This document shows positions 12,126-22,197 of a stretch of DNA of 64,000 nt, one piece after another. Under the pieces are notes generated by a model. The model was not told the DNA's origin. It worked only from the letters and a program-made list of their open reading frames with translations, and did no database searches. The stretch is taken from positions 186,001 to 250,000 of IMG/VR virus record IMGVR_UViG_3300046692_000091, one strand, 5' to 3'. A program made the position numbers and the translations under genes. Every line of letters starts with the position of its first letter. Within the stretch, counting starts at the first letter, position 1.

Positions 12126-13385
12126 TTAACCTTTTACGCAGAGAATTTGTTTGAGAGTATGGACGATGTCCACGAGTTGTTCTTGTGCAGACATTACGTC
12201 TTCGATGTTCTTGTAAGCTTTTGGTGTTTCATCGATGACAGAGATATCCTTACGACATTCTACACCAGCTGTATCACGGACATGATCTTCCAGGGTGAAT
12301 GTCTTAGCAGCCTGAGTACGGGACATGACTCGGCCAGCTCCGTGTGAACACGAGCAGAAAGAATCACGGTTACCTTTACCACGGACGATGAAAGACTTAG
12401 CGCCCATCGAACCAGGGATAATCCCGAGTGTACCTTTATCTGCGTTCACTGCACCCTTACGAGTTACCAGAACGTTGTTACCGAAGTGGCGTTCTTCTGA
12501 TACGTAGTTGTGGTGGCAGTTGATGGCCGACATATCGGAATCGATTGGCAGACCTAGAGTACGGTGGATAGCACCAAGAGTAGCATGCATCATGATCGAA
12601 CGGTTAAGTGCAGCGAAGCGTTGTGCCCAGGACACGGCTTCGATGTAGTCGTTGTAATATTGCGAACCTTCGGGGAGGTAAGCGAGATCACCATCTGGCA
12701 GATGAATGAAGAAACGTTTCATTTCTTCTTTTGCTTTCGAGATAAAGTAAGTACCGATTGCGTTACCGATACCACGAGAACCAGAGTGCAGCATCACCCA
12801 CACTTGATCGGATTCATCCAGACAGATCTCGATGAAGTGGTTACCTGTACCGAGAGTACCTACATGGTTCCATGCACGAGCTGCAGCTTTCGCCAACTTA
12901 GGATGACGTTCTACAATACGTTCCAGATGCTTACGCAGTTTCTCTGCTTCATCACGGATAGCTTGAGATTGGTGAGTGAACACGGATACCGTACCAAATG
13001 CACCACGATCGTTCTTCCCACCGTTGTCAGTACGGCCATGAGGCACTGAGGCTTCGATAGCGGCACGCAAATGGCCAAGAGAGGTCGGTAGTGCTGTGGA
13101 CTTAAAAGTAAGGCGCTGCGCAGCCATACCACAACCGATATCAACACCTACTGCGGCTGGAATGATTGCGCCTTTAGTAGCAACCACAGAACCCACTGTT
13201 GCACCTTTACCCAAGTGTACGTCGGGCATCACAGCAATGTGCGAATAGATGAATGGGAGGGCAGCAATGTTCTTGAGTTGAGAAATTGCTTCTTTCTCTA
13301 CTGGTACGCCAACGGTCCAGCCTTTGATTGGTTTAGAACCTGGTTCTACTGTATCACCAATCAGTTCAAATGTTTTCTGTTTCAT
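12126..13385 (-). CDS. rtcB: RtcB family 3'-phosphate RNA ligase
   Basis: Motifs MPDVHLGKGATVGSV, VGVDIGCG, GTLGTGNHFIE, MLHSGSRG, CHHNY, IPGSMG, SCSHGAGR, DETPKAYK. Confidence 0.97.
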   Translation of the reverse strand: MKQKTFELIGDTVEPGSKPIKGWTVGVPVEKEAISQLKNIAALPFIYSHIAVMPDVHLGKGATVGSVVATKGAIIPAAVGVDIGCGMAAQRLTFKSTALPTSLGHLRAAIEASVPHGRTDNGGKNDRGAFGTVSVFTHQSQAIRDEAEKLRKHLERIVERHPKLAKAAARAWNHVGTLGTGNHFIEICLDESDQVWVMLHSGSRGIGNAIGTYFISKAKEEMKRFFIHLPDGDLAYLPEGSQYYNDYIEAVSWAQRFAALNRSIMMHATLGAIHRTLGLPIDSDMSAINCHHNYVSEERHFGNNVLVTRKGAVNADKGTLGIIPGSMGAKSFIVRGKGNRDSFCSCSHGAGRVMSRTQAAKTFTLEDHVRDTAGVECRKDISVIDETPKAYKNIEDVMSAQEQLVDIVHTLKQILCVKG

Positions 13386-13449
13386 ATAAAGCCTCACGCG
13401 GATGGAAAGAGGAATTGTTACATACACTGACTTTGCCAGTATTATTAAA

Positions 13450-13924: not shown

Positions 13925-14222
13925 AGAACCCTAAGGCCCCCTATGCTTAAGTAATCTACAATACCAATGGCCGGCCTGCTCTATCGCCCACCTATAGGGA
14001 GCGATCATTGGTAAATGTAGCGCCACGAGTTGGCAGTATCTTTCCAGTCACGGACACCACTCATCGGGTGCCTCTATGGACCATCAAGATAGTTGAACTT
14101 ATGACTCGGCATCAGAGAGACTGTCACATCTCTAAGCACCATTCGGGTTGAAGCTTGACAGGCTTCGTTTTGTAGGTCTTCCTCCTTGTGTGTAGTAACC
14201 GCGCAACGCTACACTCTGGTCG
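13925..14222 (-). ncRNA. putative ~300-nt structured ncRNA
   Basis: ORF-free; promoter motif at 14223-14244; helices GTGTAG/CTACAC, AGAGA/TCTCT, GGCACC/GGTGTC, TACCAATG/CATTGGTA. 3' boundary approximate. Confidence 0.6.
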
Positions 14223-14244
14223 TATACTATTACGTTCTCAGTAT
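14223..14244 (-). promoter_or_regulatory. putative ncRNA-associated promoter motif
   Basis: ATACT-gagaac-GTAATAGTATA on the minus strand. Confidence 0.7.
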
Positions 14245-14245
14245 T

Positions 14246-15130
14246 TTATTTCAGGAAAGTACCACAACTTGCTTGTACATCAGTACCAACGCGAGGAATT
14301 AGTTTTACACGTGCATTGGGTAATCGGCGTTTGATGTAACGATGTAAGTAATCGATATGGCCTTCTACTGGTTCACGAGAGTAATGCCCTTCTGGTGGAT
14401 TGTACCGAACGATGTTCCAATTAACCTCTAACTGATATCCATCGATCACATCCAGGATAGCTTTAACATCAGCAAGGTTATCATTTTCATGTTCAATGAA
14501 AGCGTAGTGGATCTTCGGAACTTTGCCTGTGTGCAGCTGCCAGTCTTTGAGGATTGCGAATGCATCTCGTGGGTAACCCGCTTTAGGTAACCAACGTTTA
14601 CGAAACCGATCATTCAATGAGTAGACCGAATAATAAATCTCGGGGTATACCTCTGGATCAGTGAACACCGATTCAAGTGACCGGCGACTAAACTCTTCTG
14701 GCATGATAGTAGATATCAGGAACTTTGATTCAAGTCCATATCTGGCTGCACGTTTCTTTAAGCCACGCAAGATCTCATCGGCATTACTTAGAAAGATCTT
14801 ATTAGCTAAAGGTTCGCCTCGTGCCATGAAGTTGAAATGGACCATCTTAGCTGGATGCTTGTCGGCATAGTATCGTAGGACTTCATCTGCTTGCTGCCAG
14901 AATTCTTCAATCGTGGTATCACGTAGTTTATTCTGACCTGTTGCAGTTAACCAGCACATCCGGCAAGCTTGCTTACAACCTGTCTGAGACGACAAGTAAA
15001 CAATGAAGTAGTCATCAACCCGACGTACATATCGTGCCTCTAGCATCCCTGGGTGATCTTCAAAGCGGTGTTCGAAGTTTACTGATTGATCGAGTTGGGA
15101 TACATGTTGTTTAAAGATTAGATTATCCAT
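14246..15130 (-). CDS. RlmN/Cfr-like radical SAM protein
   Basis: SSQTGCKQACRMC (CxxxCxxC), FMARGEPLAN (MGMGEP-like), C-terminal ASCG. Confidence 0.85.
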   Translation of the reverse strand: MDNLIFKQHVSQLDQSVNFEHRFEDHPGMLEARYVRRVDDYFIVYLSSQTGCKQACRMCWLTATGQNKLRDTTIEEFWQQADEVLRYYADKHPAKMVHFNFMARGEPLANKIFLSNADEILRGLKKRAARYGLESKFLISTIMPEEFSRRSLESVFTDPEVYPEIYYSVYSLNDRFRKRWLPKAGYPRDAFAILKDWQLHTGKVPKIHYAFIEHENDNLADVKAILDVIDGYQLEVNWNIVRYNPPEGHYSREPVEGHIDYLHRYIKRRLPNARVKLIPRVGTDVQASCGTFLK

Positions 15131-15595: not shown

Positions 15596-15671
<76 letters not shown>

Positions 15672-15676
15672 TAATT

Positions 15677-15765
15677 TGGCGGAAGCATAGAGATTCGAAC
15701 TCTAGGGGCTGTTACACCCGACGGTTTTCAAGACCGTTGCCTTAAGCCATCTCGGCCATGCTTCC
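15677..15765 (-). tRNA. tRNA-Ser(TGA)
   Basis: Class II cloverleaf with long variable arm; loop CT-TGA-AA; CCA. Confidence 0.95.
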
Positions 15766-15780
15766 TGTGTTGCTTTTGTA

Positions 15781-15866
15781 TGGTGCGGACAGAGAGACTC
15801 GAACTCTCACGCCCTAAGGGCGCTGGAACCTAAATCCAGTGCGTCTACCAATTCCGCCATGTCCGC
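15781..15866 (-). tRNA. tRNA-Leu(TAG)
   Basis: Class II cloverleaf; CTGGA-TTTAGGT-TCCAG; CCA. Confidence 0.95.
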
Positions 15867-15868
15867 TG

Positions 15869-15890
15869 TATATTATTACACACCAAGTAT
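15869..15890 (-). promoter_or_regulatory. putative ncRNA-associated promoter motif
   Basis: ATACT-tggtgt-GTAATAATATA ends 2 nt before tRNA-Leu position 1. Confidence 0.7.
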
Positions 15891-15897
15891 TTTTTTA

Positions 15898-16629
15898 TTA
15901 GACTACGCTGGGGGTGTAATTATTGGTGTAACGCACGTAGTTACTAATTCTTACATTACCTAGGTAACGAGGAACGTTATTAGCGTTGCTGTTTAGAGCA
16001 CCTAGGTATAACGTAGACAAGTTAGCGAAGTTACTAGCTGGTCCACTCTGGAAGAAACCAGATAATGTTCCACCTGAAACTCCAGGCTGCATGTCTTGTA
16101 GTACGCCGTTAATATAGAATCTTAGGCGGCGATTAGTATCGCAGGTCATTGCGTATTTAGTGACTATATTCGTAAAGGTGTTGAAGGTAACTGCCGGGTA
16201 ACGACACTCTGACTTCGCTCCACTGTTGCTGTTATCAGAGAACATCAATAGATTACCATAACCGGCATCACCAAAGCGCATGGTGAAACCTTTGAGTAAT
16301 GACGAATCTGTCATATAGAATTCGTTTGTCCAAGCCGTAGCATTACCTGGGCGAAGTTCTGACCACTCGATTGTCCAATTGGTACTAGACAAATCCAAGA
16401 GTGGGTTGAAAGCCATGAATAAACGCGAACCACTACCACCAGCTGTAGGCATAGATAGGGTTGGTTTATTATCAATTAGTGTTGTGTTACTCACCACTGC
16501 GCCAGCGGATATTGTGATGGGTCTATTACTAACAGTCTCGGTCACTGTGGCCATGTCAATATACAGGATCACATCACCTGTTTCTGGCGGGACCGAGCTC
16601 GAACTTGGTGATAGTAGTAATTCATACAT
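15898..16629 (-). CDS. LamG/concanavalin A-like lectin-fold protein, probably virion-associated
   Basis: LDLSSTNWTIEW and GNVRISNYVRYTNNYTP signatures; paralog of 18676..19395. Confidence 0.7.
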   Translation of the reverse strand: MYELLLSPSSSSVPPETGDVILYIDMATVTETVSNRPITISAGAVVSNTTLIDNKPTLSMPTAGGSGSRLFMAFNPLLDLSSTNWTIEWSELRPGNATAWTNEFYMTDSSLLKGFTMRFGDAGYGNLLMFSDNSNSGAKSECRYPAVTFNTFTNIVTKYAMTCDTNRRLRFYINGVLQDMQPGVSGGTLSGFFQSGPASNFANLSTLYLGALNSNANNVPRYLGNVRISNYVRYTNNYTPSVV

Positions 16630-16692
16630 GTTGATTATCCTGGTTATATAAACATATAATTAGGTGATAGTCAAAATCCCCTTTGCATAATA

Positions 16693-16725
16693 CAGCATAA
16701 AGCTTCCCCAAAGGGAAGCACTATG
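16693..16725 (-). terminator. hairpin terminator-like element
   Basis: GCATAAA-GCTTCCC-CAAA-GGGAAGC-ACTATG on + strand, just downstream of tRNA-Leu(TAA). Confidence 0.75.
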
Positions 16726-16727
16726 TT

Positions 16728-16814
16728 TGGTGCGGGGAGCGGGATTCGAACCCAGCGAGCCTGTACAGGCGGCGGCTTTTAAGGCCGCTATGTATTCCGC
16801 TCCATCATCCCCGC
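16728..16814 (-). tRNA. tRNA-Leu(TAA)
   Basis: GCGGC-CTTAAAA-GCCGC anticodon arm; variable arm; TTCGAAT T-loop; CCA. Confidence 0.92.
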
Positions 16815-16827
16815 GTGTAACTAAATT

Positions 16828-17668
16828 CGGTCCCAGCATCCAGGATTCAAGCCCTGGTTATCAACGAACACGGGGTCGTTGGTAGATCGCCGCTGGGCGA
16901 GCTTTTCATCCCAATGTACAGCTTGAGCTGGTCGCGGCATTCCGCTAGAGGTCAAACCGTTCCGAAGGGTCTATCTACTTACTCGCCTTACAACGCTTCA
17001 GAGTGATGGAGGGCAAGTAAAAGAATCGGGGTAACCCACTATTCCCTTGGCAGCGGTCATGGTTTAAGATGACTTGCGGAATAGCTCGTTACATGGGTGC
17101 ACTATAGCGTACACGTCGCTGCCTTTCGGCCTTCTCATCGATTACCAGCCGCAGCTAGTTCTCTGTGTATGGCCCAGTAGCCTCTTTACGGGAGTCATCT
17201 ACTGGGAAGGTTACCACTACAGGACTATCACCTTCTATGGCCTGGTATTCCAACCAGTTCATGTAACCAAGACGGACATCTGATCCGTTGCAGCCGAGTC
17301 GTAACGCTTCTTCGGTATGGCGCCTTAGTAGTCAGGACTATCTGACCTTTGGGGTATCATGAGTACGGGCTTCGAGTTTCCCTGATATTCCACTATTCTA
17401 GTCTTTTGTGGAACGTCATTGGGTATCATTCGTAGATCTATACAAGTGTAACTCTGTGCCCTAGTCTGAGGATTAATCAGACACCTGTATTGATCCGAGC
17501 CTATCCCTTCCAGGCTAGGTCTTCACACTCCCACTTCTGGGGGAATGCGTATGTAAAAGTTTGATGGAACGATCCTCTACCTTCATCTATTCGGACTTAG
17601 GCGACCTTTTCAGCACAGTGGGGTGGAGTGCACTTACCCAACATCCTACCATGTCTTTCACATGCTCT
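16828..17668 (-). ncRNA. putative ~850-nt highly structured ncRNA
   Basis: No credible ORF; more than 10 visible helices, a GAAA tetraloop, a repeated loop motif; G-U pairs favour the minus strand. Boundaries approximate. Confidence 0.7.
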
Positions 17669-18343
17669 TTATTCGTGCGTAGTAGACAGCTCAGAGATAA
17701 TGCAGATCGAACCATCTTCAACCGGAGTGGTATCGGAGTAATCAACCTGATTGTAAACACCACCATGGAACTGGAAGGTTTCATATTTCCACGAACTATC
17801 TAGCTTCAGCACTGGGCAGACTGACTTACGACCTTGGCAAAGCACTGACGCCGATACGGAACCAGCAGCTGTGACATGTAAGCTAATCTTGAATGGTACA
17901 CCCAATGGAACGTCTTCTATTAGTGTAAAGTTGTTTATTAGTGCGTCATCGAAGTTAGCTCGGAAACCAGCTGTGATCTTCCCTTTATTCCAGAAGACTT
18001 TCAGTGGCGGAGTTGTAGCATCTTTGACATGGACTTGTGCAATTACCACTTTCTTAGCCGAGTTGACTTTAGTAACAGTCATCTCTTGGCGAGACCAGTG
18101 ATGTGCTGCGCTAGTAAGAGACCAATAAGCTGGTTCTTTCCATTCACAGCGTGTGCGATGTGTACTTTTGCTGGACGCCCCTAATGTGGGCGCAGAGAGT
18201 TGAATAGAACCGTCTTCCAATTGACTGACCACTTCTGGACATCTTACCAAGGCTTCCGAACCGAGGAGCTCCAATGCAACCGGATTCTCATCAGAGACCG
18301 GTAATGGAGTAGCAATCAAATAGTTACTGATATCAACGAACAT
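17669..18343 (-). CDS. polysaccharide lyase family 7 (alginate lyase-like)
   Basis: RTRCEWKE (RxExR-like), IAQVH (QIH-like) and FHGGVYNQ (YFKAGxYxQ-like) in the PL7 order. Confidence 0.85.
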   Translation of the reverse strand: MFVDISNYLIATPLPVSDENPVALELLGSEALVRCPEVVSQLEDGSIQLSAPTLGASSKSTHRTRCEWKEPAYWSLTSAAHHWSRQEMTVTKVNSAKKVVIAQVHVKDATTPPLKVFWNKGKITAGFRANFDDALINNFTLIEDVPLGVPFKISLHVTAAGSVSASVLCQGRKSVCPVLKLDSSWKYETFQFHGGVYNQVDYSDTTPVEDGSICIISELSTTHE

Positions 18344-18361
18344 TTTAACTCTCTTTTGAAA

Positions 18362-18437
18362 TGGCGGGCATCCAGGGAGTCGAACCCCGAACCGACGGAT
18401 TTGGAATCCGTTACTCTGCCAATTGAGCTAGACACCC
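18362..18437 (-). tRNA. tRNA-Trp(CCA)
   Basis: ACGGA-TTCCAAA-TCCGT anticodon arm; G73; CCA. Confidence 0.93.
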
Positions 18438-18444
18438 GAATGAA

Positions 18445-18528
18445 GAAAGGGAACAGGAATCGAACCTGCGTTTCCGGCTTGGTACTTATGGTGGCCACCG
18501 GTGTCCTAGGCCGCTAGACGACCCCTCT
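18445..18528 (-). ncRNA. tRNA-like RNA (Glu-type body) with 18-nt anticodon loop
   Basis: AGAGGGG-TC-GTCT-AGCGGCCT-AGGAC-A-CCGGT-[18 nt]-GCCGG-AAAC-GCAGG-TTCGATT-CCTGT-TCCCTTT-C; no CCA. Confidence 0.7.
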
Positions 18529-18646
18529 CACAAACTTGGTCGGGTTTTTGTTAAACCAGGCTAACCGATATCCCTGGTCCCTATCGAGTAAGCTCTAGGG
18601 GAGTCTTACTCTTACGCTCGTTTGGAGACTTAACGACAGTCTCTCG

Positions 18647-18668
18647 TATACTATTACACTGCCAGTAT
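18647..18668 (-). promoter_or_regulatory. putative ncRNA-associated promoter motif
   Basis: ATACT-ggcagt-GTAATAGTATA. Confidence 0.7.
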
Positions 18669-18675
18669 TTTGTTA

Positions 18676-19395
18676 TTACAACTCTAGTGGGCCAGGAGTA
18701 TAGTTACGTGTATATCTAGCGAAGTTACTAAGTCGAACTCTACCGTGATGCCCAGGAACAGCACGTACCGAACTACCGTTCGAATCACCAAATATAAGCG
18801 AGGTGATATTGATCAGTGCTGTTGGTGTAATCGTTTGCATAATGTAGGTTCCATTAGCTGCACCCTTAGCCAATGGGAGTCTCTGTCCATTACGGTAAAT
18901 AAAGATCTGACCATTCTTACATACAAATGCCCATCTACTCAAATTACTAACTAAGGCAGCTTTAGTGAATTGGGTATTATAACAATCGGCTGGTGCAGAG
19001 GCTGTGTTATCCCCCAAATGGAGTCTGTCTAAGAAACCAGAGTCACCATACCTGAAGAATAGTCCACGGCCAGCTGTTGAACTAGTCATTGAAAATTCAA
19101 GGGCATAGGCAGTAGGGGCGGTGTCGTTTATAGATGACCATTCTAATGTCCAGTTTATTGCACTTAAGTTGAGAGGGGCTGCAAATGTCATCACCTGTTT
19201 AGCTGCAACCGTTGGGTATTGCATACTGCCTTGCCCATCGATTAAATACCCAGCGTCAGCTATTGCTCCACCGGTATTGTTGGTGACGGTACCTAACCCA
19301 GATAGATCGGTGGCGGTAACTGGATCATACAAGAATAACACATCCCCTGTGTCCTCCACTGGTAAACTACCCCCAGCTAATAATGCCTCATACAT
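18676..19395 (-). CDS. LamG/concanavalin A-like lectin-fold protein, probably virion-associated
   Basis: LNLSAINWTLEW and GRVRLSNFARYTRNYTP; paralog of 15898..16629. Confidence 0.7.
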   Translation of the reverse strand: MYEALLAGGSLPVEDTGDVLFLYDPVTATDLSGLGTVTNNTGGAIADAGYLIDGQGSMQYPTVAAKQVMTFAAPLNLSAINWTLEWSSINDTAPTAYALEFSMTSSTAGRGLFFRYGDSGFLDRLHLGDNTASAPADCYNTQFTKAALVSNLSRWAFVCKNGQIFIYRNGQRLPLAKGAANGTYIMQTITPTALINITSLIFGDSNGSSVRAVPGHHGRVRLSNFARYTRNYTPGPLEL

Positions 19396-19434
19396 GACGG
19401 TGTGTCCTTTGGTTTATCAATTCAAACTATTGGG

Positions 19435-19460
19435 CGACATAAGAGTAGCCGAAGCTACTC
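19435..19460 (-). terminator. hairpin terminator-like element
   Basis: Minus strand GAGTAGC-TTCG-GCTACTC-TTATGTCG. Confidence 0.75.
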
Positions 19461-19653
19461 ATCCATAAAGAGTTCCCCAGTTAACAACTTTATTCAGTTG
19501 TTCTTGAGTAGGGATTTTATCTCTGACTCGTTGCTCGCATTCTTTATCGAATTGTTCCATTCTGATACGTGCTTCTTTGAGCCTTTCTTTTTGTTCATCT
19601 GTCAGTGGTTCTAATGCGTTACGTGAGAGTGCTATTAAAGTAGCCAGGCTCAT
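19459..19653 (-). CDS. microprotein paralog 5 (64 aa)
   Basis: ATGA-coupled; MSLATLI...PTQEQLNKVV. Confidence 0.75.
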   Translation of the reverse strand: MSLATLIALSRNALEPLTDEQKERLKEARIRMEQFDKECEQRVRDKIPTQEQLNKVVNWGTLYG

Positions 19654-19832
19654 ATCGTGATCAGCCTATTCAAGAGTTCTTGTGAAGGAGCCGTACGCGC
19701 GTGGCGCTCGTCAATCTCTTTGTTATATCCCCGCATTCTTTCATAGAACGCTATATTCCTTTTCTCACGCTCTTCGGCAGATATTGGTTCAGCTCTTTTA
19801 TTAGCCAGATCTATTAAAGCTTTCAGGCTCAT
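19650..19832 (-). CDS. microprotein paralog 4 (60 aa)
   Basis: ATGA-coupled; MSLKALI...PSQELLNRLITI. Confidence 0.75.
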   Translation of the reverse strand: MSLKALIDLANKRAEPISAEEREKRNIAFYERMRGYNKEIDERHARTAPSQELLNRLITI

Positions 19833-19996
19833 AATGAGATTACTCTGTTTAAGAGTTCTTCTGTAACTACTGAGGCTTTCCATTCCTTGGATAACCGGAT
19901 GTTAGTCTGTCTCATTCTTTCTTGGGCAACGGAAAGGCTTTCTTCATGTGTACCATTGCGCGTACGAGCATCTTCGATGAGTTGTTCAAGTGTCAT
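19829..19996 (-). CDS. microprotein paralog 3 (55 aa; not in ORF track)
   Basis: MTLEQLIEDARTRNGTHEESLSVAQERMRQTNIRLSKEWKASVVTEELLNRVISL; ATGA-coupled on both sides. Confidence 0.75.
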   Translation of the reverse strand: MTLEQLIEDARTRNGTHEESLSVAQERMRQTNIRLSKEWKASVVTEELLNRVISL

Positions 19997-20160
19997 AACG
20001 TACATCTCTTAGCTAAAAGTTCAGGGGTAACTTTCTGCTTCTCGAAGTCTTCAGCACACCGCTTATTAAAAGCAGCCGAACGTTTAGCATGGGCTGCCAT
20101 GCGTTCTTCTTTAGTGCCCATGCTATCTCTTACAGCTTTACACAGTGCCTCTAGACTCAT
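19993..20160 (-). CDS. microprotein paralog 2 (55 aa; not in ORF track)
   Basis: MSLEALCKAVRDSMGTKEERMAAHAKRSAAFNKRCAEDFEKQKVTPELLAKRCTL; ATGA-coupled. Confidence 0.75.
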   Translation of the reverse strand: MSLEALCKAVRDSMGTKEERMAAHAKRSAAFNKRCAEDFEKQKVTPELLAKRCTL

Positions 20161-20342
20161 AACGTACACCTTTTGTTCAAGATCTCAGGAGTCATTTGTT
20201 GATTTTTCAACTGTTGCTCCAGCCTCTGGTCCAGTTCAGACATATATTTCTTTTGATACTCTTGAAACTCTACCTGTGTCATACCCATAGCCGATGCAAT
20301 CCGATCTGCCATTCGTTCAATTAATCCCGGTGTCATTGCCAT
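20157..20342 (-). CDS. microprotein paralog 1 (61 aa)
   Basis: Ends MTPEILNKRCTL; TAATG-coupled to the upstream gene. Confidence 0.75.
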   Translation of the reverse strand: MAMTPGLIERMADRIASAMGMTQVEFQEYQKKYMSELDQRLEQQLKNQQMTPEILNKRCTL

Positions 20343-20605
20343 TAATCCACCTGTATCTGTACATAGACTCTTGTCACACCATGCACGAAGTCATAGTTGC
20401 TTACGTACTGTGCTTCATTCAAAGGCTTAGCACTGATCCATACTTGGATGATATCCTGTCCACACTTACGTAGGATCTTAGATACACGGTTCTGGATACG
20501 TCTACGACCTACTGCAGATATCTTAGGGAACTCACGCTTTAACATGAGTACCATGCGTTCATGGCATTCTTTGCCACGCTGTACTTCTGATGGGGTTCTA
20601 TGCAT
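20342..20605 (-). CDS. small basic hypothetical protein
   Basis: Likely ATG 20605 (TAATG overlap); track ORF 20342..20650. Confidence 0.65.
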   Translation of the reverse strand: MHRTPSEVQRGKECHERMVLMLKREFPKISAVGRRRIQNRVSKILRKCGQDIIQVWISAKPLNEAQYVSNYDFVHGVTRVYVQIQVD

Positions 20606-20859
20606 TAGTGCATCACCATTGAACCTTCGAGATGGCAAGCGCAACGACACAGTTGTGTTTCTGTATCGCCATCAACCACAATCAACAGACTAGGATAGAA
20701 TTGACGTTTAGCAAAAACTAGCTTACCCCATTCTGATTCTGTATCATCTCGTTCAATAGCTACAGCCGTTTCACTAAAGTTCTTTTTTAGGAAAGCTTCA
20801 CTCAGTGTGTGATCTTTATTGAGGTATTGACGTTCACTTCTTGCGCAACAAGGTACCAT
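20605..20859 (-). CDS. hypothetical protein
   Basis: SD AGAGGA; ATG 20859. Confidence 0.6.
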   Translation of the reverse strand: MVPCCARSERQYLNKDHTLSEAFLKKNFSETAVAIERDDTESEWGKLVFAKRQFYPSLLIVVDGDTETQLCRCACHLEGSMVMH

Positions 20860-20883
20860 TGGATATTCCTCTTTTGGATTAGA

Positions 20884-20916
20884 CAGCATAAAGGAGATCC
20901 GAAGATCTCCTTTATT
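20884..20916 (-). terminator. hairpin terminator after tRNA operon
   Basis: AAAGGAGATC-CGAA-GATCTCCTTT on + strand; minus strand reads TTCG loop then TTTATGCTG. Confidence 0.8.
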
Positions 20917-20920
20917 GAAT

Positions 20921-20996
20921 TGGCTCCGAGACTAGGATTCGAACCTAGGACCAACGCATTAACAGTGCGCGGCTCTACCAACTGAGCTATCTCGAA
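20921..20996 (-). tRNA. tRNA-Asn(GTT)
   Basis: GCGCA-CTGTTAA-TGCGT; G73; CCA. Confidence 0.93.
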
Positions 20997-20997
20997 A

Positions 20998-21074
20998 TGG
21001 CTCCATGACCTGGACTCGAACCAGGGACACCTTGATTAACAGTCAAGTGCTACTACCAACTGAGCTATCATGGA
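20998..21074 (-). tRNA. tRNA-Asn(GTT)
   Basis: CTTGA-CTGTTAA-TCAAG; G73; CCA. Confidence 0.93.
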
Positions 21075-21231
21075 ATGTACTGGGATGCCGGGCTTTACCG
21101 GATGATCGTTTTATCTAGACTCCCTCTCATGTCTAGCGATGCTTGTATCCCCAAGGATAGCCTAGGCTTGCAGCGAGCTAACGGTTACCCGTTTGGTGCA
21201 AGAGCTGATCTAGTCTACCGATGGAAATTCT

Positions 21232-21315
21232 TTATCTATCAGCGGGTCTTGAAGCCGCACACGGTCGATGGTATTTAGCCAACGATTGTCCTACCGATTG
21301 GACGATGATAGATAA
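21232..21315 (-). ncRNA. degenerate tRNA-like RNA with extended anticodon arm
   Basis: TTATCTATCA/TGATAGATAA closing stem; D-arm GTCC-AATCGGTA-GGAC; 7-bp arm TCGTTGG/CCATCGA; T-like arm GCGG-CTTCAAGAC-CCGC. Confidence 0.55.
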
Positions 21316-21439
21316 TGAAACGTTTACCTAGACAGTTCCCTAATAACTGATTACCCTGCGCGTCAGGTCGTTCGTTTATTAGGTAGGCGTGTATGCGACG
21401 CCTCGTTTTAGTTCTGCTCCTAAGAGCCTTCTGTCTAGC

Positions 21440-21519
21440 ACGCCCCTACCGGATTTGAACCGATGACCGATCAACGTATGGTTACCGTCGATTGCTCTAC
21501 CTAGCTGAGCTAAGGGGCG
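21440..21519 (-). ncRNA. tRNA-like RNA (Ile2/Met-type body) with 7-bp anticodon stem and 9-nt loop
   Basis: CGCCCCT-TA-GCTC-AGCTAGGTA-GAGC-A-ATCGACG-GTAACCATA-CGTTGAT-CGGTC-ATCGG-TTCAAAT-CCGGT-AGGGGCG-T; no CCA. Confidence 0.75.
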
Positions 21520-21523
21520 ACAA

Positions 21524-21608
21524 TGGTGGGTGCAGAAGGATTCGAACCTTCGAAGTCAGCGACGGGAGATTTACAATCTCCTGGGTTTGGCCACTCCCCA
21601 ACACACCC
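21524..21608 (-). tRNA. tRNA-Tyr(GTA)
   Basis: GGAGA-TTGTAAA-TCTCC; long variable arm; CCA. Confidence 0.93.
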
Positions 21609-21853
21609 GTATCAGCAGCAGCCGGTCCACCCGGTCATGAGGTTTTAACTCTTCTGTGCTGATAGTAAAACATTTGAAATTAGCTATGGAGAAAGGCGAC
21701 TCGTTTTATCTCCTGACTTGTACCCATGCACCCATTATTGATCCACTGGGCGACTCCTTTAGTGTGGATCGGGCTGTACCTTACCGTCGTTGTAAGCTAA
21801 TTTCAAAACTAACGAGGCAGTAGAAGTCCGAAGGACCAATACCACCTCTAAGA

Positions 21854-21930
21854 TGGCGCAACCAGCGGGACTCGAACCCGCGACCTCTTGCGTGACAGGC
21901 AAGCATTCTAACCAACTGAACTATGGCTGC
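21854..21930 (-). tRNA. tRNA-Asp(GTC)
   Basis: CTTGC-CTGTCAC-GCAAG; G73; CCA. Confidence 0.95.
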
Positions 21931-21933
21931 AAT

Positions 21934-22026
21934 AAACTAGTCGCGCTTTAACCCGCGTAAGCTAATAGCCCTGTTATGGCGGGCCGTCCAAATCAAGGGA
22001 GTTGAACCCGAGTTCTCGACTAGTTT
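21934..22026 (-). ncRNA. four-way-junction RNA with T-like and D-like arms in permuted order
   Basis: 10-bp closing stem AAACTAGTCG/CGACTAGTTT; arms GGG-TTCAACT-CCC, GCCC-9nt-GGGC, CGC-GGGTTAAA-GCG. Confidence 0.55.
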
Positions 22027-22033
22027 AAAAAAA

Positions 22034-22111
22034 TGGGGTGAGCTACGGGTCTCGAACCCGTGACCTCCAGGGTCACATCCTGGCACTCTAACCAACTGAG
22101 CTAAGCCCAAC
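22034..22111 (-). tRNA. tRNA-His(GTG)
   Basis: CCAGG-ATGTGAC-CCTGG; G-1:C73; CCA; atypical A32 and U1.C72. Confidence 0.85.
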
Positions 22112-22175
22112 ACTAAACACTGAGACCAATTGTCTTCCGATGCAATCAAGCTTCGTACTACGCCAATCAGTCTCG

Positions 22176-22197
22176 TATACTATTACACAACAAGTAT
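22176..22197 (-). promoter_or_regulatory. putative ncRNA-associated promoter motif
   Basis: ATACT-tgttgt-GTAATAGTATA upstream of the His-Asp-Tyr-Asn-Asn operon. Confidence 0.7.

What the first reader, a model, noticed from the sequence alone, without database searches (positions are those of the whole stretch)
21232..21315. Second tRNA-like RNA with elongated anticodon and acceptor stems
Seen: a 10-bp closing stem, a canonical-looking D-arm (GTCC-AATCGGTA-GGAC), a 7-bp arm (one mismatch) with loop CTAAATA, and a degenerate T-arm. It shares the enlarged-anticodon-arm theme with 18445 and 21440 while having a different tRNA body. Inference: repeated, independent remodelling of the anticodon arm, which suggests selected function.
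Basis: partly seen in the sequence, partly recalled or inferred. Interest (0 to 1): 0.6.

Follow-up and report, generated by a model that had tools for sequence, protein, structure and literature searches.

The report
Orphan tRNA-like insert in phage array
Inside the tRNA gene cluster of a 315-kb soil phage sits an 84-base gene that folds like a tRNA but cannot work as one; it is real and tRNA-derived, was found only in this phage's own lineage, and its use is unproven.

Summary
Window 21232-21315, minus strand, folds into the described cloverleaf. It has a 10-bp closing helix, a canonical D-arm, a 7-bp anticodon-like stem with one U.U, the loop CUAAAUA, and a T-arm with a canonical loop but a C53.C61 mismatch.

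An unbiased tRNA covariance model scores it 26.6 bits (E about 1e-5). Canonical tRNAs here score 76-88 bits and non-tRNA sequence at most 9. Default ARAGORN and Rfam miss it.

It cannot decode. The stem is 2 bp too long, position 37 is U, the discriminator is paired, and no CCA is encoded although all ten real tRNAs of this phage encode it.

It lies in a 92-nt insertion absent from the closest relative and from four other complete kin genomes. No homolog was found anywhere, apart from identical copies in two metagenome contigs that probably represent one sister lineage. Its D-arm is that of phage tRNA-Gln/Phe genes.

It sits between structured RNA modules in one His-to-Asn array. That array holds two more tRNA mimics with remodelled arms, and those two are conserved in kin.

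Best reading: a non-decoding, tRNA-derived module acting, if at all, through its tRNA-shaped body. Selection on this copy is only weakly indicated, and expression is untested.

The parts
21232..21315 (-). tRNA-like element t2 (the finding): an 84-nt cloverleaf. The tRNA-equivalent core is 21235-21312, followed by UAAA where real tRNAs have NCCA.
21306..21315 (-). 5' strand of the 10-bp closing helix. The inner 7 bp are the acceptor stem; the outer 3 bp pair the leader with the discriminator and trailer.
21232..21241 (-). 3' strand of the 10-bp closing helix. No free discriminator and no encoded CCA.
21288..21303 (-). D-arm GUCC/AAUCGGUA/GGAC. With the preceding UC it matches exactly the D-arm of 10 IMG/VR phage tRNAs (7 Gln, 2 Phe, 1 Asn).
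21265..21285 (-). Anticodon-like arm: a 7-bp stem with one U.U and the 7-nt loop CUAAAUA (21272-21278). This gives 'anticodon' AAA, U33 present, and U at position 37. The pentamer ACCAU starts at the last loop base.
21242..21258 (-). T-arm: 4 bp plus C53.C61, with the loop UUCAAGA (the T54 T55 C56 A57 A58 pattern).
   Evidence: G53 and C61 nearly invariant in 26 real tRNAs
21231..21322 (-). 92-nt segment present here but absent from the closest relative L005, which reads straight across the junction. It is bounded by the imperfect 8-nt direct repeat TAGGTAAA (21323-21330) / TAGATAAA (21231-21238).
21328..21438 (-). Element X, immediately upstream in the transcript: a conserved 4-helix structured RNA of unknown family.
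21437..21519 (-). t1: a tRNA-like with a 7-bp stem and 9-nt loop, fused to X through an N-G-C-N linker. ARAGORN calls it Thr(ggt). D6 annotates its homolog as tRNA-OTHER.
21146..21230 (-). Module Y, immediately downstream: a closed-stem domain with a GUAA-capped hairpin. Shared with L005 only.
21075..21145 (-). Module Z: two hairpins around AUAAAACGA. Shared with L005, Psa21, D6 and L007. Followed directly by tRNA-Asn.
22171..22185 (-). Promoter-like motif TAATAGTATACGAGA upstream of tRNA-His. Inferred start of the His-to-Asn transcription unit that contains t2.
   Evidence: 3 copies against 0.12 expected, each upstream of a tRNA sub-array; like motifs in kin
18441..18529 (-). Third tRNA mimic of the array: Glu-type D-arm and a long irregular anticodon arm. 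Conserved in L007.

Best explanation
The element is a tRNA-derived gene with a Gln/Phe-type body. It has been turned into a non-decoding tRNA mimic and entered this phage lineage as a 92-nt module of a fast-shuffling tRNA/small-RNA array.

It is co-transcribed from the promoter-like site upstream of tRNA-His, in the order His, Asp, a 245-nt RNA, Tyr, t1, X, t2, Y, Z, Asn, Asn. It folds on its own into a tRNA-shaped domain.

It cannot serve the ribosome or a synthetase as an ordinary tRNA, for these reasons:
- its anticodon stem is 2 bp too long;
- position 37 is U;
- the G53-C61 pair is broken;
- the discriminator is paired;
- there is no CCA.

Whatever it does, it does through its tRNA-like body. 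Most likely it acts as a structural or processing spacer that tRNA end-processing enzymes (RNase P, RNase Z/E) can recognise, separating and insulating the flanking structured RNAs X and Y.

Shown: it is tRNA-derived, non-canonical, lineage-specific, single-copy, and an independent fold in its context. Inferred: transcription, processing, and any benefit.
For: tRNA-derived:
- Covariance models score it 26.6 and 32.0 bits.
- Relaxed ARAGORN calls it.
- The tRNA signature bases are present.
- Its 18-nt D-arm is exact in 10 phage tRNAs.

Non-decoding:
- 7-bp stem, U37 and C53.C61.
- 10 of 10 canonical tRNAs of the phage encode CCA, and none of the 3 mimics does.

Remodelled rather than eroded:
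- 25 of 27 stem pairs are Watson-Crick.
- The extra nucleotides on the two sides of the arm pair with each other.

Module in an array:
- L005 reads straight across the junction.
- In other phages the slot after X holds real tRNAs: Pro in L014, Gln in L004 and L006, Gly in L016.
- Each neighbour folds as a closed-stem domain.

Theme:
- t1 is fused to X in at least 15 phages with a free-varying anticodon arm.
- The 18445 mimic is conserved in L007.

Weak sign of constraint:
- A contig from an independent sediment metagenome differs at 36 of 1034 positions.
- Seven of those differences lie in X and about 20 in the 245-nt RNA. None is listed in 21199-21330.
- A soil contig has 3 differences, all in X.
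Against: - The element is dispensable in kin. L005, Psa21, D6 and the phages of L007 and L014 lack it anywhere in their genomes, and X and Y mature there without it.
- A 10-bp helix with a paired discriminator, no CCA and a weakened T-stem is a poor substrate for RNase P, RNase Z and the CCA-adding enzyme.
- There is no RNA data. No RNA run holds the stretch at more than a few percent of its words.
- There is no covariation, because every copy seen is identical.
- Four of the sediment contig's 36 differences were not listed and could lie inside the element.
- The two metagenome contigs share their three differences from the window, so they count as one comparison.
Confidence: 0.4

Rival explanations
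1. It is a neutral relic: a tRNA gene picked up by array shuffling that has lost function and is simply tolerated until it is deleted.
For: - It is an orphan, with no homolog in the phage records, IMG/VR, metagenome loci or representative bacterial genomes.
- It is absent from the closest relative and from four other complete kin genomes.
- Several defects are each one point change away from a normal tRNA-Phe-type gene: G53 to C, U.U in the stem, and the loop CUGAAAA to CUAAAUA.
- Arrays of this clade gain and lose modules freely.
- An 8-nt direct repeat flanks the segment, so a simple deletion would give the L005 state.
Against: - The stems are otherwise intact, with 25 of 27 pairs Watson-Crick.
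- The longer arm needs matched insertions on both strands.
- No difference is listed in it between two lineages whose neighbouring modules differ by 3.5-6%.
- Two other mimics with remodelled arms are conserved in kin.
Confidence: 0.3
2. It is a decoy or sponge in the conflict over tRNAs. A tRNA-shaped RNA with an unusable anticodon arm binds a host tRNA-targeting defence nuclease or sensor, or a tRNA-modifying enzyme, and keeps it away from real tRNAs.
For: - The phage encodes an RtcB RNA ligase 8 kb away (phrog_1075, E 2e-147). It is conserved in kin.
- The phage also encodes an RlmN/Cfr-like radical-SAM RNA methylase.
- Its tRNA set is rich in Asn, Asp, His and Tyr. From general knowledge, these are the targets of the anticodon nuclease colicin E5.
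- Three mimics with altered arms share the pentamer ACCAU (the chance of some shared pentamer is about 0.007, judged post hoc).
- Published work shows that phage tRNAs evade or neutralise tRNA-cleaving defences (PMC10264068, PMC11464382, PMC11555353, seen).
Against: - There is no evidence of binding or of any matching host nuclease.
- The published cases use functional tRNAs with loop changes, not elongated stems.
- The element is missing from close kin that keep RtcB.
- The loops of the three mimics otherwise differ.
Confidence: 0.15
3. It is a working decoding tRNA, tRNA-Phe with anticodon AAA, that supplies UUU decoding for an AT-richer phage in a GC-rich host.
For: - Relaxed ARAGORN calls it tRNA-Phe(aaa).
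- U33 and a 7-nt loop are present.
- Two IMG/VR tRNA-Phe(GAA) genes have the same D-arm.
Against: - 7-bp anticodon stem, U37, unmodifiable A34, C53.C61, a paired discriminator that is U rather than A, and no CCA when all ten real tRNAs encode it.
- It falls below Rfam and default ARAGORN thresholds.
- It scores 26.6 bits against 76-88 for real tRNAs.
Confidence: 0.03
4. It is not an RNA gene on the minus strand at all. It is a chance palindrome-rich spacer, or the plus strand is the functional one.
For: - The plus strand folds better (-29.9 kcal/mol, z -3.9) than the minus strand (z -2.2).
- All pairs are Watson-Crick, so the fold does not name a strand.
Against: - The tRNA model hits only the minus strand, and over its full length.
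- The D-loop GG and the T-loop UUCAA signatures exist on the minus strand only.
- All tRNAs and ORFs of the region are on the minus strand.
- The chance of a relaxed ARAGORN call in this slot is about 4e-4.
Confidence: 0.03

Closest known systems
Canonical phage-encoded tRNA-Gln / tRNA-Phe genes
   Same: - Same 18-nt stretch UC-GUCC-AAUCGGUA-GGAC.
- Same cloverleaf order.
- U8, A14, G18 G19, and T-loop UUCRA.
- Location inside a phage tRNA array.
   Different: The real genes are 73-75 nt with a 5-bp anticodon stem, a purine at 37, G53-C61, a free discriminator and an encoded CCA. This element has none of those five.
tRNA-like processing handles next to other RNAs: mascRNA at the 3' end of MALAT1 (PMC8457004); tRNA-like parts of murine gammaherpesvirus 68 TMERs (PMC4337559); the small stable RNAs (species 1 and 2) in the phage T4 tRNA cluster (from memory)
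   Same: - A tRNA-shaped, non-decoding fold set flush against other structured RNAs in one precursor.
- The anticodon region is free to differ.
- The proposed use is as a site for tRNA end-processing enzymes.
   Different: - Those are eukaryotic, or viral in eukaryotes, and their processing has been shown by experiment.
- Here nothing is shown.
- The helix is closed over the discriminator.
- Close kin do without the element.
Bacterial Y RNAs of the YrlA type (PMC4201824)
   Same: - An ncRNA domain that mimics tRNA D and T arms, including an A15:U48 or G15:C48 Levitt pair.
- Found also in phages.
- Genomic association with RtcB in some bacteria.
   Different: - YrlA has a Ro60-binding stem with GNCGAA(N)G and lies within 4 kb of an rsr (TROVE) gene.
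- This element has no such motif.
- No YrlA or Y RNA match in Rfam.
- No Ro60-like gene among the neighbours tested.
- Its ends are in the acceptor helix, not in a Ro-binding stem.
t1-X composite of the same array (tRNA-like fused to element X; apparently undescribed)
   Same: - Same transcript and same strand.
- tRNA body with a lengthened, non-standard anticodon arm.
- No CCA.
- T-loop UUCAA.
   Different: - t1 is conserved in at least 15 phages and is always joined to X by an N-G-C-N linker.
- t2 has no such linker, no fused partner and no relatives.

Membership tests
Canonical decoding (elongator) tRNA | Score above the family threshold in tRNA detectors | tested here: not met
   Not called by default ARAGORN. 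No Rfam RF00005 hit at gathering score or at E<=10. 26.6 bits in my own tRNA model against 76-88 for real ones.
Canonical decoding (elongator) tRNA | 5-bp anticodon stem, 7-nt loop with U33 and a purine at 37 | tested here: not met
   7-bp stem with U.U. The loop has 7 nt and U33, but U at 37.
Canonical decoding (elongator) tRNA | 7-bp acceptor stem, free discriminator, 3' CCA (encoded in all tRNAs of this phage) | tested here: not met
   The 7 bp are present but the helix runs on for 3 more pairs over the discriminator. UAAA stands in place of NCCA. 10 of 10 real tRNAs here encode CCA.
Canonical decoding (elongator) tRNA | Elbow signature: U8, A14, G18 G19, T54 T55 C56 A58, G53-C61 | tested here: inconclusive
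   All are present except G53-C61, which is C.C. G53 and C61 are nearly invariant in 26 real phage tRNAs.
Canonical decoding (elongator) tRNA | Aminoacylation and use on the ribosome | not testable with these tools
   Needs acid-gel northern or charged-tRNA sequencing.
tRNA-Sec | 8+5 or 9+4 acceptor/T helices, 6-bp D-stem, long variable arm, anticodon UCA | tested here: not met
   4-bp D-stem, 6-nt variable region, loop CUAAAUA.
tmRNA | tRNA-like ends plus a tag reading frame | tested here: not met
   ARAGORN tmRNA search found none. No Rfam hit.
YrlA-type bacterial Y RNA | GNCGAA(N)G Ro-binding motif in the closing stem; match to the family model | tested here: not met
   The motif is absent from the 84 nt (sequence). 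No Rfam match.
YrlA-type bacterial Y RNA | rsr (Ro60/TROVE) gene within about 4 kb on the same strand | tested here: inconclusive
   None of 18 neighbouring ORFs scanned matches one. Two large neighbours have no match to anything. The whole genome was not scanned for TROVE.
tRNA-like processing handle (mascRNA / TMER type) | RNase P cut at its 5' side and RNase Z cut at its 3' side release the neighbours | not testable with these tools
   No RNA runs hold the stretch. Needs end mapping or in vitro cleavage.
t1-X composite | tRNA-like joined by an N-G-C-N linker to the 4-helix element X | tested here: not met
   t2 is followed by AAAGAAUUUCC and module Y, not by the linker and X.
Miniature mobile element (MITE-like) | Terminal inverted repeats, target duplication, several copies per genome | tested here: not met
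   There is a 10-bp inverted repeat and an imperfect 8-nt flanking repeat. It is single-copy in the 315-kb genome and absent from five kin genomes.

The most novel reading that the evidence does not exclude
This element, t1 and the 18445 element are a set of phage-made tRNA mimics whose anticodon arms were deliberately lengthened and carry a shared ACCAU patch. They act together with the phage's RtcB ligase and RlmN-like methylase against host defences that cut or sense tRNAs. They would do so as decoys, inhibitors or repair scaffolds rather than as translators.
Probability: 0.12. Interest if true: 0.75.

Novelty: new member of a known kind. Interest (0 to 1): 0.38.

Why it matters
Phage tRNA clusters are usually read as codon-supply or anti-defence tRNA sets, and annotation pipelines either drop odd members or mislabel them. 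This case shows that one array in a Psa21-like jumbo phage mixes ten ordinary tRNAs with at least three tRNA look-alikes and several conserved structured RNAs. The look-alikes can be told apart by simple marks: no encoded CCA and a lengthened anticodon arm.

For this particular element the value is modest. It is a clean natural presence/absence pair with the close relative L005. That makes a direct test possible of whether such mimics matter for RNA processing or for escape from tRNA-targeting immunity.

The larger prize lies beside it. That is the widespread, apparently undescribed X RNA, which always follows a tRNA-like.

Tried and rejected
Homolog searches for the element, all empty or chance:
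- blastn against 50,697 phage records: only a 19-nt D-arm match to a Gordonia phage tRNA-Gln.
- Four exact or gapped patterns in IMG/VR. The 20 hits to the T-arm 17-mer are all GC-rich coding DNA with no cloverleaf.
- All fetched loci up to L020 by blastn.
- Whole genomes of five kin.
- A loop pattern in 185,579 bacterial genomes gave one chance match with no fold.
- Relatives cannot be drawn for a virus record.

Parent tRNA: no tRNA in 92 ARAGORN calls from the window and loci shares its acceptor or T arms.

Expression: no RNA run holds the stretch. Four wastewater runs labelled 'RNA?' hold 4-5% of the words, so expression could not be tested.

Intron reading: the arm has no bulge-helix-bulge and no bulges at all, so the RtcB gene is not evidence for splicing of this element.

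Mobile-element reading: it is single-copy.

Y RNA reading: no motif, no Rfam hit, and no Ro60 gene among the neighbours.

RtcB as partner of X: rejected. RtcB is absent from six small X-bearing phages or proviruses.

Model bias: my first tRNA model (R1) was biased because 8 of its 26 training tRNAs were chosen for sharing the D-arm. I rebuilt it without them as R2, and the score fell from 32.0 to 26.6 bits but stayed significant.

The sigma-70 and terminator scans gave nothing useful on the minus strand.

Full report
WHERE WE ARE

The window is bases 186001-250000 of a 314,814-bp IMG/VR virus record rated complete. Its kin are the about 305-kb Pseudomonas syringae phages Psa21 (Tepukevirus) and D6 and three IMG/VR jumbo contigs of 310-317 kb. 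A DNA run from a rhizosphere metagenome holds the stretch completely and is probably its source.

All 11 tRNAs that ARAGORN finds in the whole genome lie in this window, on the minus strand, between 15596 and 22110. The finding lies inside that array.

THE OBSERVATION

Read on the minus strand, 21232-21315 is an 84-nt cloverleaf exactly as described. Its parts are:
- a 10-bp all-Watson-Crick closing helix;
- UC, then the D-arm GUCC/AAUCGGUA/GGAC;
- two unpaired A;
- a 7-bp stem with one U.U, capped by CUAAAUA;
- six unpaired bases;
- a T-arm of four pairs plus C.C, with the loop UUCAAGA.

The cloverleaf is both the MFE and the centroid (-23.5 kcal/mol, z -2.2). It survives as an independent domain when the whole 365-nt stretch between the flanking tRNAs is folded.

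The tRNA tertiary-signature bases are in place: U8, A14, an A15/U48 Levitt pair, G18 G19, A21, U33, and U54 U55 C56 A58.

Three points show it is more than chance:
- A covariance model that I built from 18 tRNAs of this phage clade, not chosen for likeness, matches it over the full model at 26.6 bits, E 7.7e-6 in 10 kb.
- The six canonical type-I tRNAs score 76-88 bits, the long-arm tRNAs 30-47, and non-tRNA sense-strand sequence at most 8.
- ARAGORN at a 90% threshold calls it tRNA-Phe(aaa). Shuffled genomes give 1-4 such calls per 315 kb, so a call in this slot and strand has a chance of about 4e-4.

Default ARAGORN and Rfam miss it, even at E<=10.

The plus strand folds even better, because every pair is Watson-Crick and two A.C juxtapositions become G.U. 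It has no tRNA signature and no model hit, and every gene nearby is on the minus strand.

WHAT IT IS NOT

It is not a working tRNA, for these reasons:
- The anticodon stem is two pairs too long. From established tRNA geometry, this would move and rotate the loop relative to the acceptor end.
- Position 37 is U.
- The near-universal G53-C61 pair is C.C. G53 and C61 are nearly invariant in 26 real phage tRNAs.
- The discriminator is paired with the leader.
- The 3' side reads UAAA where all ten canonical tRNAs of this phage encode NCCA.

None of the three odd tRNA-likes of the array encodes CCA. In this genome that is a clean mark separating mimics from tRNAs.

It is also not tRNA-Sec, tmRNA, a YrlA-type Y RNA or a multi-copy mobile element. 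The membership table gives the tests.

WHERE IT CAME FROM

Its D-arm with the two preceding bases (18 nt) occurs exactly in 14 IMG/VR contigs. Ten of these are ordinary 73-75-nt tRNAs: 7 Gln, 2 Phe(GAA) and 1 Asn. The loop CUAAAUA is two changes from the Phe loop CUGAAAA. The body is therefore Gln/Phe-type, but no donor was found.

Nothing else of the element has a relative in any of the following:
- the phage records;
- IMG/VR;
- the loci fetched through L020;
- 185,579 bacterial genomes;
- the rest of its own genome;
- the complete genomes of five kin.

The closest relative, L005, is 89% identical in the flanks. It reads straight from the end of element X into module Y, where the window has 92 extra bases (21231-21322). 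These are bounded by TAGGTAAA and TAGATAAA. Either an insertion here or a repeat-mediated deletion there would fit. Psa21, D6 and a freshwater-sediment contig lack both the element and Y.

Two further metagenomes, from other studies, carry the element:
- A 1323-nt sediment contig differs from the window at 36 of 1034 positions. Seven of these are in X and about 20 in the 245-nt RNA. None is listed in 21199-21330.
- A 151-nt soil contig has three differences, all in X.

The two contigs share those three differences, so they count as one sister lineage. Four of the 36 differences were not printed. At the rate seen in the neighbouring RNA modules, about five changes would be expected in 84 nt, so this is a weak hint of constraint and no more.

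THE NEIGHBOURHOOD

The array is a string of closed-stem RNA modules. Behind a motif, TAATAGTATACGAGA, that recurs upstream of each tRNA sub-array, the order on the minus strand is:
- His
- a hairpin
- Asp
- a 245-nt conserved RNA
- Tyr
- t1
- X
- the element (t2)
- Y
- Z
- Asn
- Asn

X (21328-21438) is a four-helix RNA with long invariant junctions. I found 17 distinct copies in phages and proviruses of 42-317 kb. In 20 of its 29 pairs there are compensatory changes. It has no Rfam match, and no paper in the library holds its conserved strings.

In all copies but one it directly follows a tRNA-like (t1; here 21437-21519) through an N-G-C-N linker. In the most divergent copy (L016) a canonical tRNA ending in ACCA stands there instead. 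The acceptor, D and T arms of t1 are kept while its anticodon arm varies:
- an ordinary 5-bp stem and 7-nt loop in L005;
- a UUA triloop and a GUAA tetraloop in L007;
- 40-60-nt inserts in L009, L010 and L012.

The third mimic, 18441-18529, has a Glu-type D-arm. It keeps its odd arm in the diverged relative L007.

The slot just after X, which our element fills, holds real tRNAs in other phages: Pro in L014, Gln in L004 and L006, Gly in L016. In others it holds different RNA modules.

The phage also encodes an RtcB RNA ligase (12126-13427), conserved in the jumbo kin but absent from small X-bearing phages. It also encodes an RlmN/Cfr-like radical-SAM enzyme (14246-15130).

HOW IT MOST LIKELY WORKS

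Shown:
- It is a tRNA-derived, single-copy, lineage-specific module.
- It folds on its own.
- It lacks what decoding needs.

Inferred:
- It is transcribed with the array.
- Any effect comes from its tRNA-shaped body.

I commit to the reading that it is a non-decoding tRNA mimic serving as a structural or processing spacer between X and Y, recognisable by tRNA end-processing enzymes (0.4). The remodelled arm is the argument that it is not mere decay. About three extra bases on each side of the arm pair with each other, and 25 of 27 stem pairs are Watson-Crick.

Against this reading:
- Close kin do without the element.
- The closed 10-bp helix and weakened T-stem make it a poor RNase P/Z substrate.
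- There is no RNA evidence.

The rivals:
- A tolerated relic (0.3).
- A decoy in the tRNA-cleavage arms race (0.15), suggested by RtcB, by the Asn/Asp/His/Tyr-rich tRNA set, and by a pentamer, ACCAU, shared by all three remodelled arms (about 0.007 by chance, judged post hoc).
- A true tRNA-Phe(AAA) (0.03).
- A chance or plus-strand feature (0.03).

COMPARISON AND NOVELTY

It works most like the tRNA-like handles that sit beside other RNAs: mascRNA, the herpesvirus TMERs, and the stable RNAs of the T4 tRNA cluster. It resembles the tRNA-mimic domain of bacterial Y RNAs in form, but it fails the tests for membership of the YrlA family.

Odd or pseudo tRNAs in phage arrays are a known kind, and this is a new and rather isolated member. 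The inference of selected remodelling is supported for the two sister elements by comparison across phages, but not yet for this one.

The more novel object is next door: the t1-X composite.

Noticed in passing
window 21328-21438 (-); copies in L002-L020: Element X is a conserved four-helix RNA with invariant junction strings (for example AGAACUAAAACGAGGCG and GGGUAAUCAG). I found 17 distinct copies in phages and proviruses of 42-317 kb, and 20 of 29 pairs show compensatory changes. It has no Rfam hit, no exact-pattern hit in 185,579 bacterial genomes, and no paper holds its strings. It looks like an undescribed RNA family.
   Followed up: partly
window 21437-21519 (-); L003 2623-2706, L005 7210-7286, L007 2587-2658 and 3171-3250, L009-L020: X is preceded in all copies but one by a tRNA-like (t1), joined by an N-G-C-N linker with G and C invariant; in the most divergent copy (L016) a canonical tRNA ending in ACCA stands there. 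The acceptor, D and T arms of t1 are kept. Its anticodon arm ranges from normal (L005, called Ile aat) through a UUA triloop and a GUAA tetraloop to 40-60-nt inserts.
   Followed up: partly
window 18441-18529 (-); L007 7032-7117: A third tRNA mimic has a Glu-type D-arm and a long irregular anticodon arm. It is conserved with that arm in the diverged relative L007, but is absent from that position in L005.
   Followed up: partly
window 21265-21285, 21460-21490, 18470-18500 (-): The pentamer ACCAU occurs in all three remodelled anticodon arms and in none of the ten canonical tRNAs apart from their CCA ends. Several kin t1 arms carry a related CCAU.
   Followed up: partly
window 21106-21113, 21403-21410, 21701-21708 (-): Three of the four copies of TAAAACGA in the 64-kb window lie on the minus strand within 600 nt. 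One is in Z, one in X and one in the 245-nt spacer RNA (21609-21853), each between two hairpins. This may be a shared protein-binding or tertiary motif.
   Followed up: no
window 12126-13427 (-): RtcB-family RNA ligase (phrog_1075, E 2e-147). It is about 80% identical in D6 and two IMG/VR jumbo kin, and absent from the small X-bearing phages.
   Followed up: partly
window 14246-15130 (-): Radical-SAM protein distantly like RlmN/Cfr RNA methyltransferases (E 5e-15, far below the curated cut-off; phrog_27142). From general knowledge, RlmN also methylates A37 of tRNAs, which would fit a tRNA-centred gene island.
   Followed up: no
window 22171-22185, 18642-18656, 14218-14232 (-): The motif TAATAGTATACGAGA occurs three times against 0.12 expected, each upstream of a tRNA sub-array. 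Like motifs occur in the kin arrays. It is probably a phage promoter.
   Followed up: no
window 15596-22110 (-): All ten canonical tRNAs encode their 3' CCA. The set contains Asn (twice), Asp, His and Tyr, which are the GUN-anticodon, queuosine-type tRNAs.
   Followed up: no
window 21931-22033 (-); L005 6650-6815, L014 1940-2098, L007 3008-3168: Kin carry a small ORF of about 55 aa (MKVKIK...) between tRNA genes of the array. The window has only a 103-nt hairpin-forming spacer between His and Asp. Modules of the array turn over quickly among close relatives.
   Followed up: no
window 19459-20342 (-): A run of five small back-to-back ORFs (58-77 aa) just downstream of the array. They appear to have similar C-terminal ends and may be tandem paralogs.
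   Followed up: no
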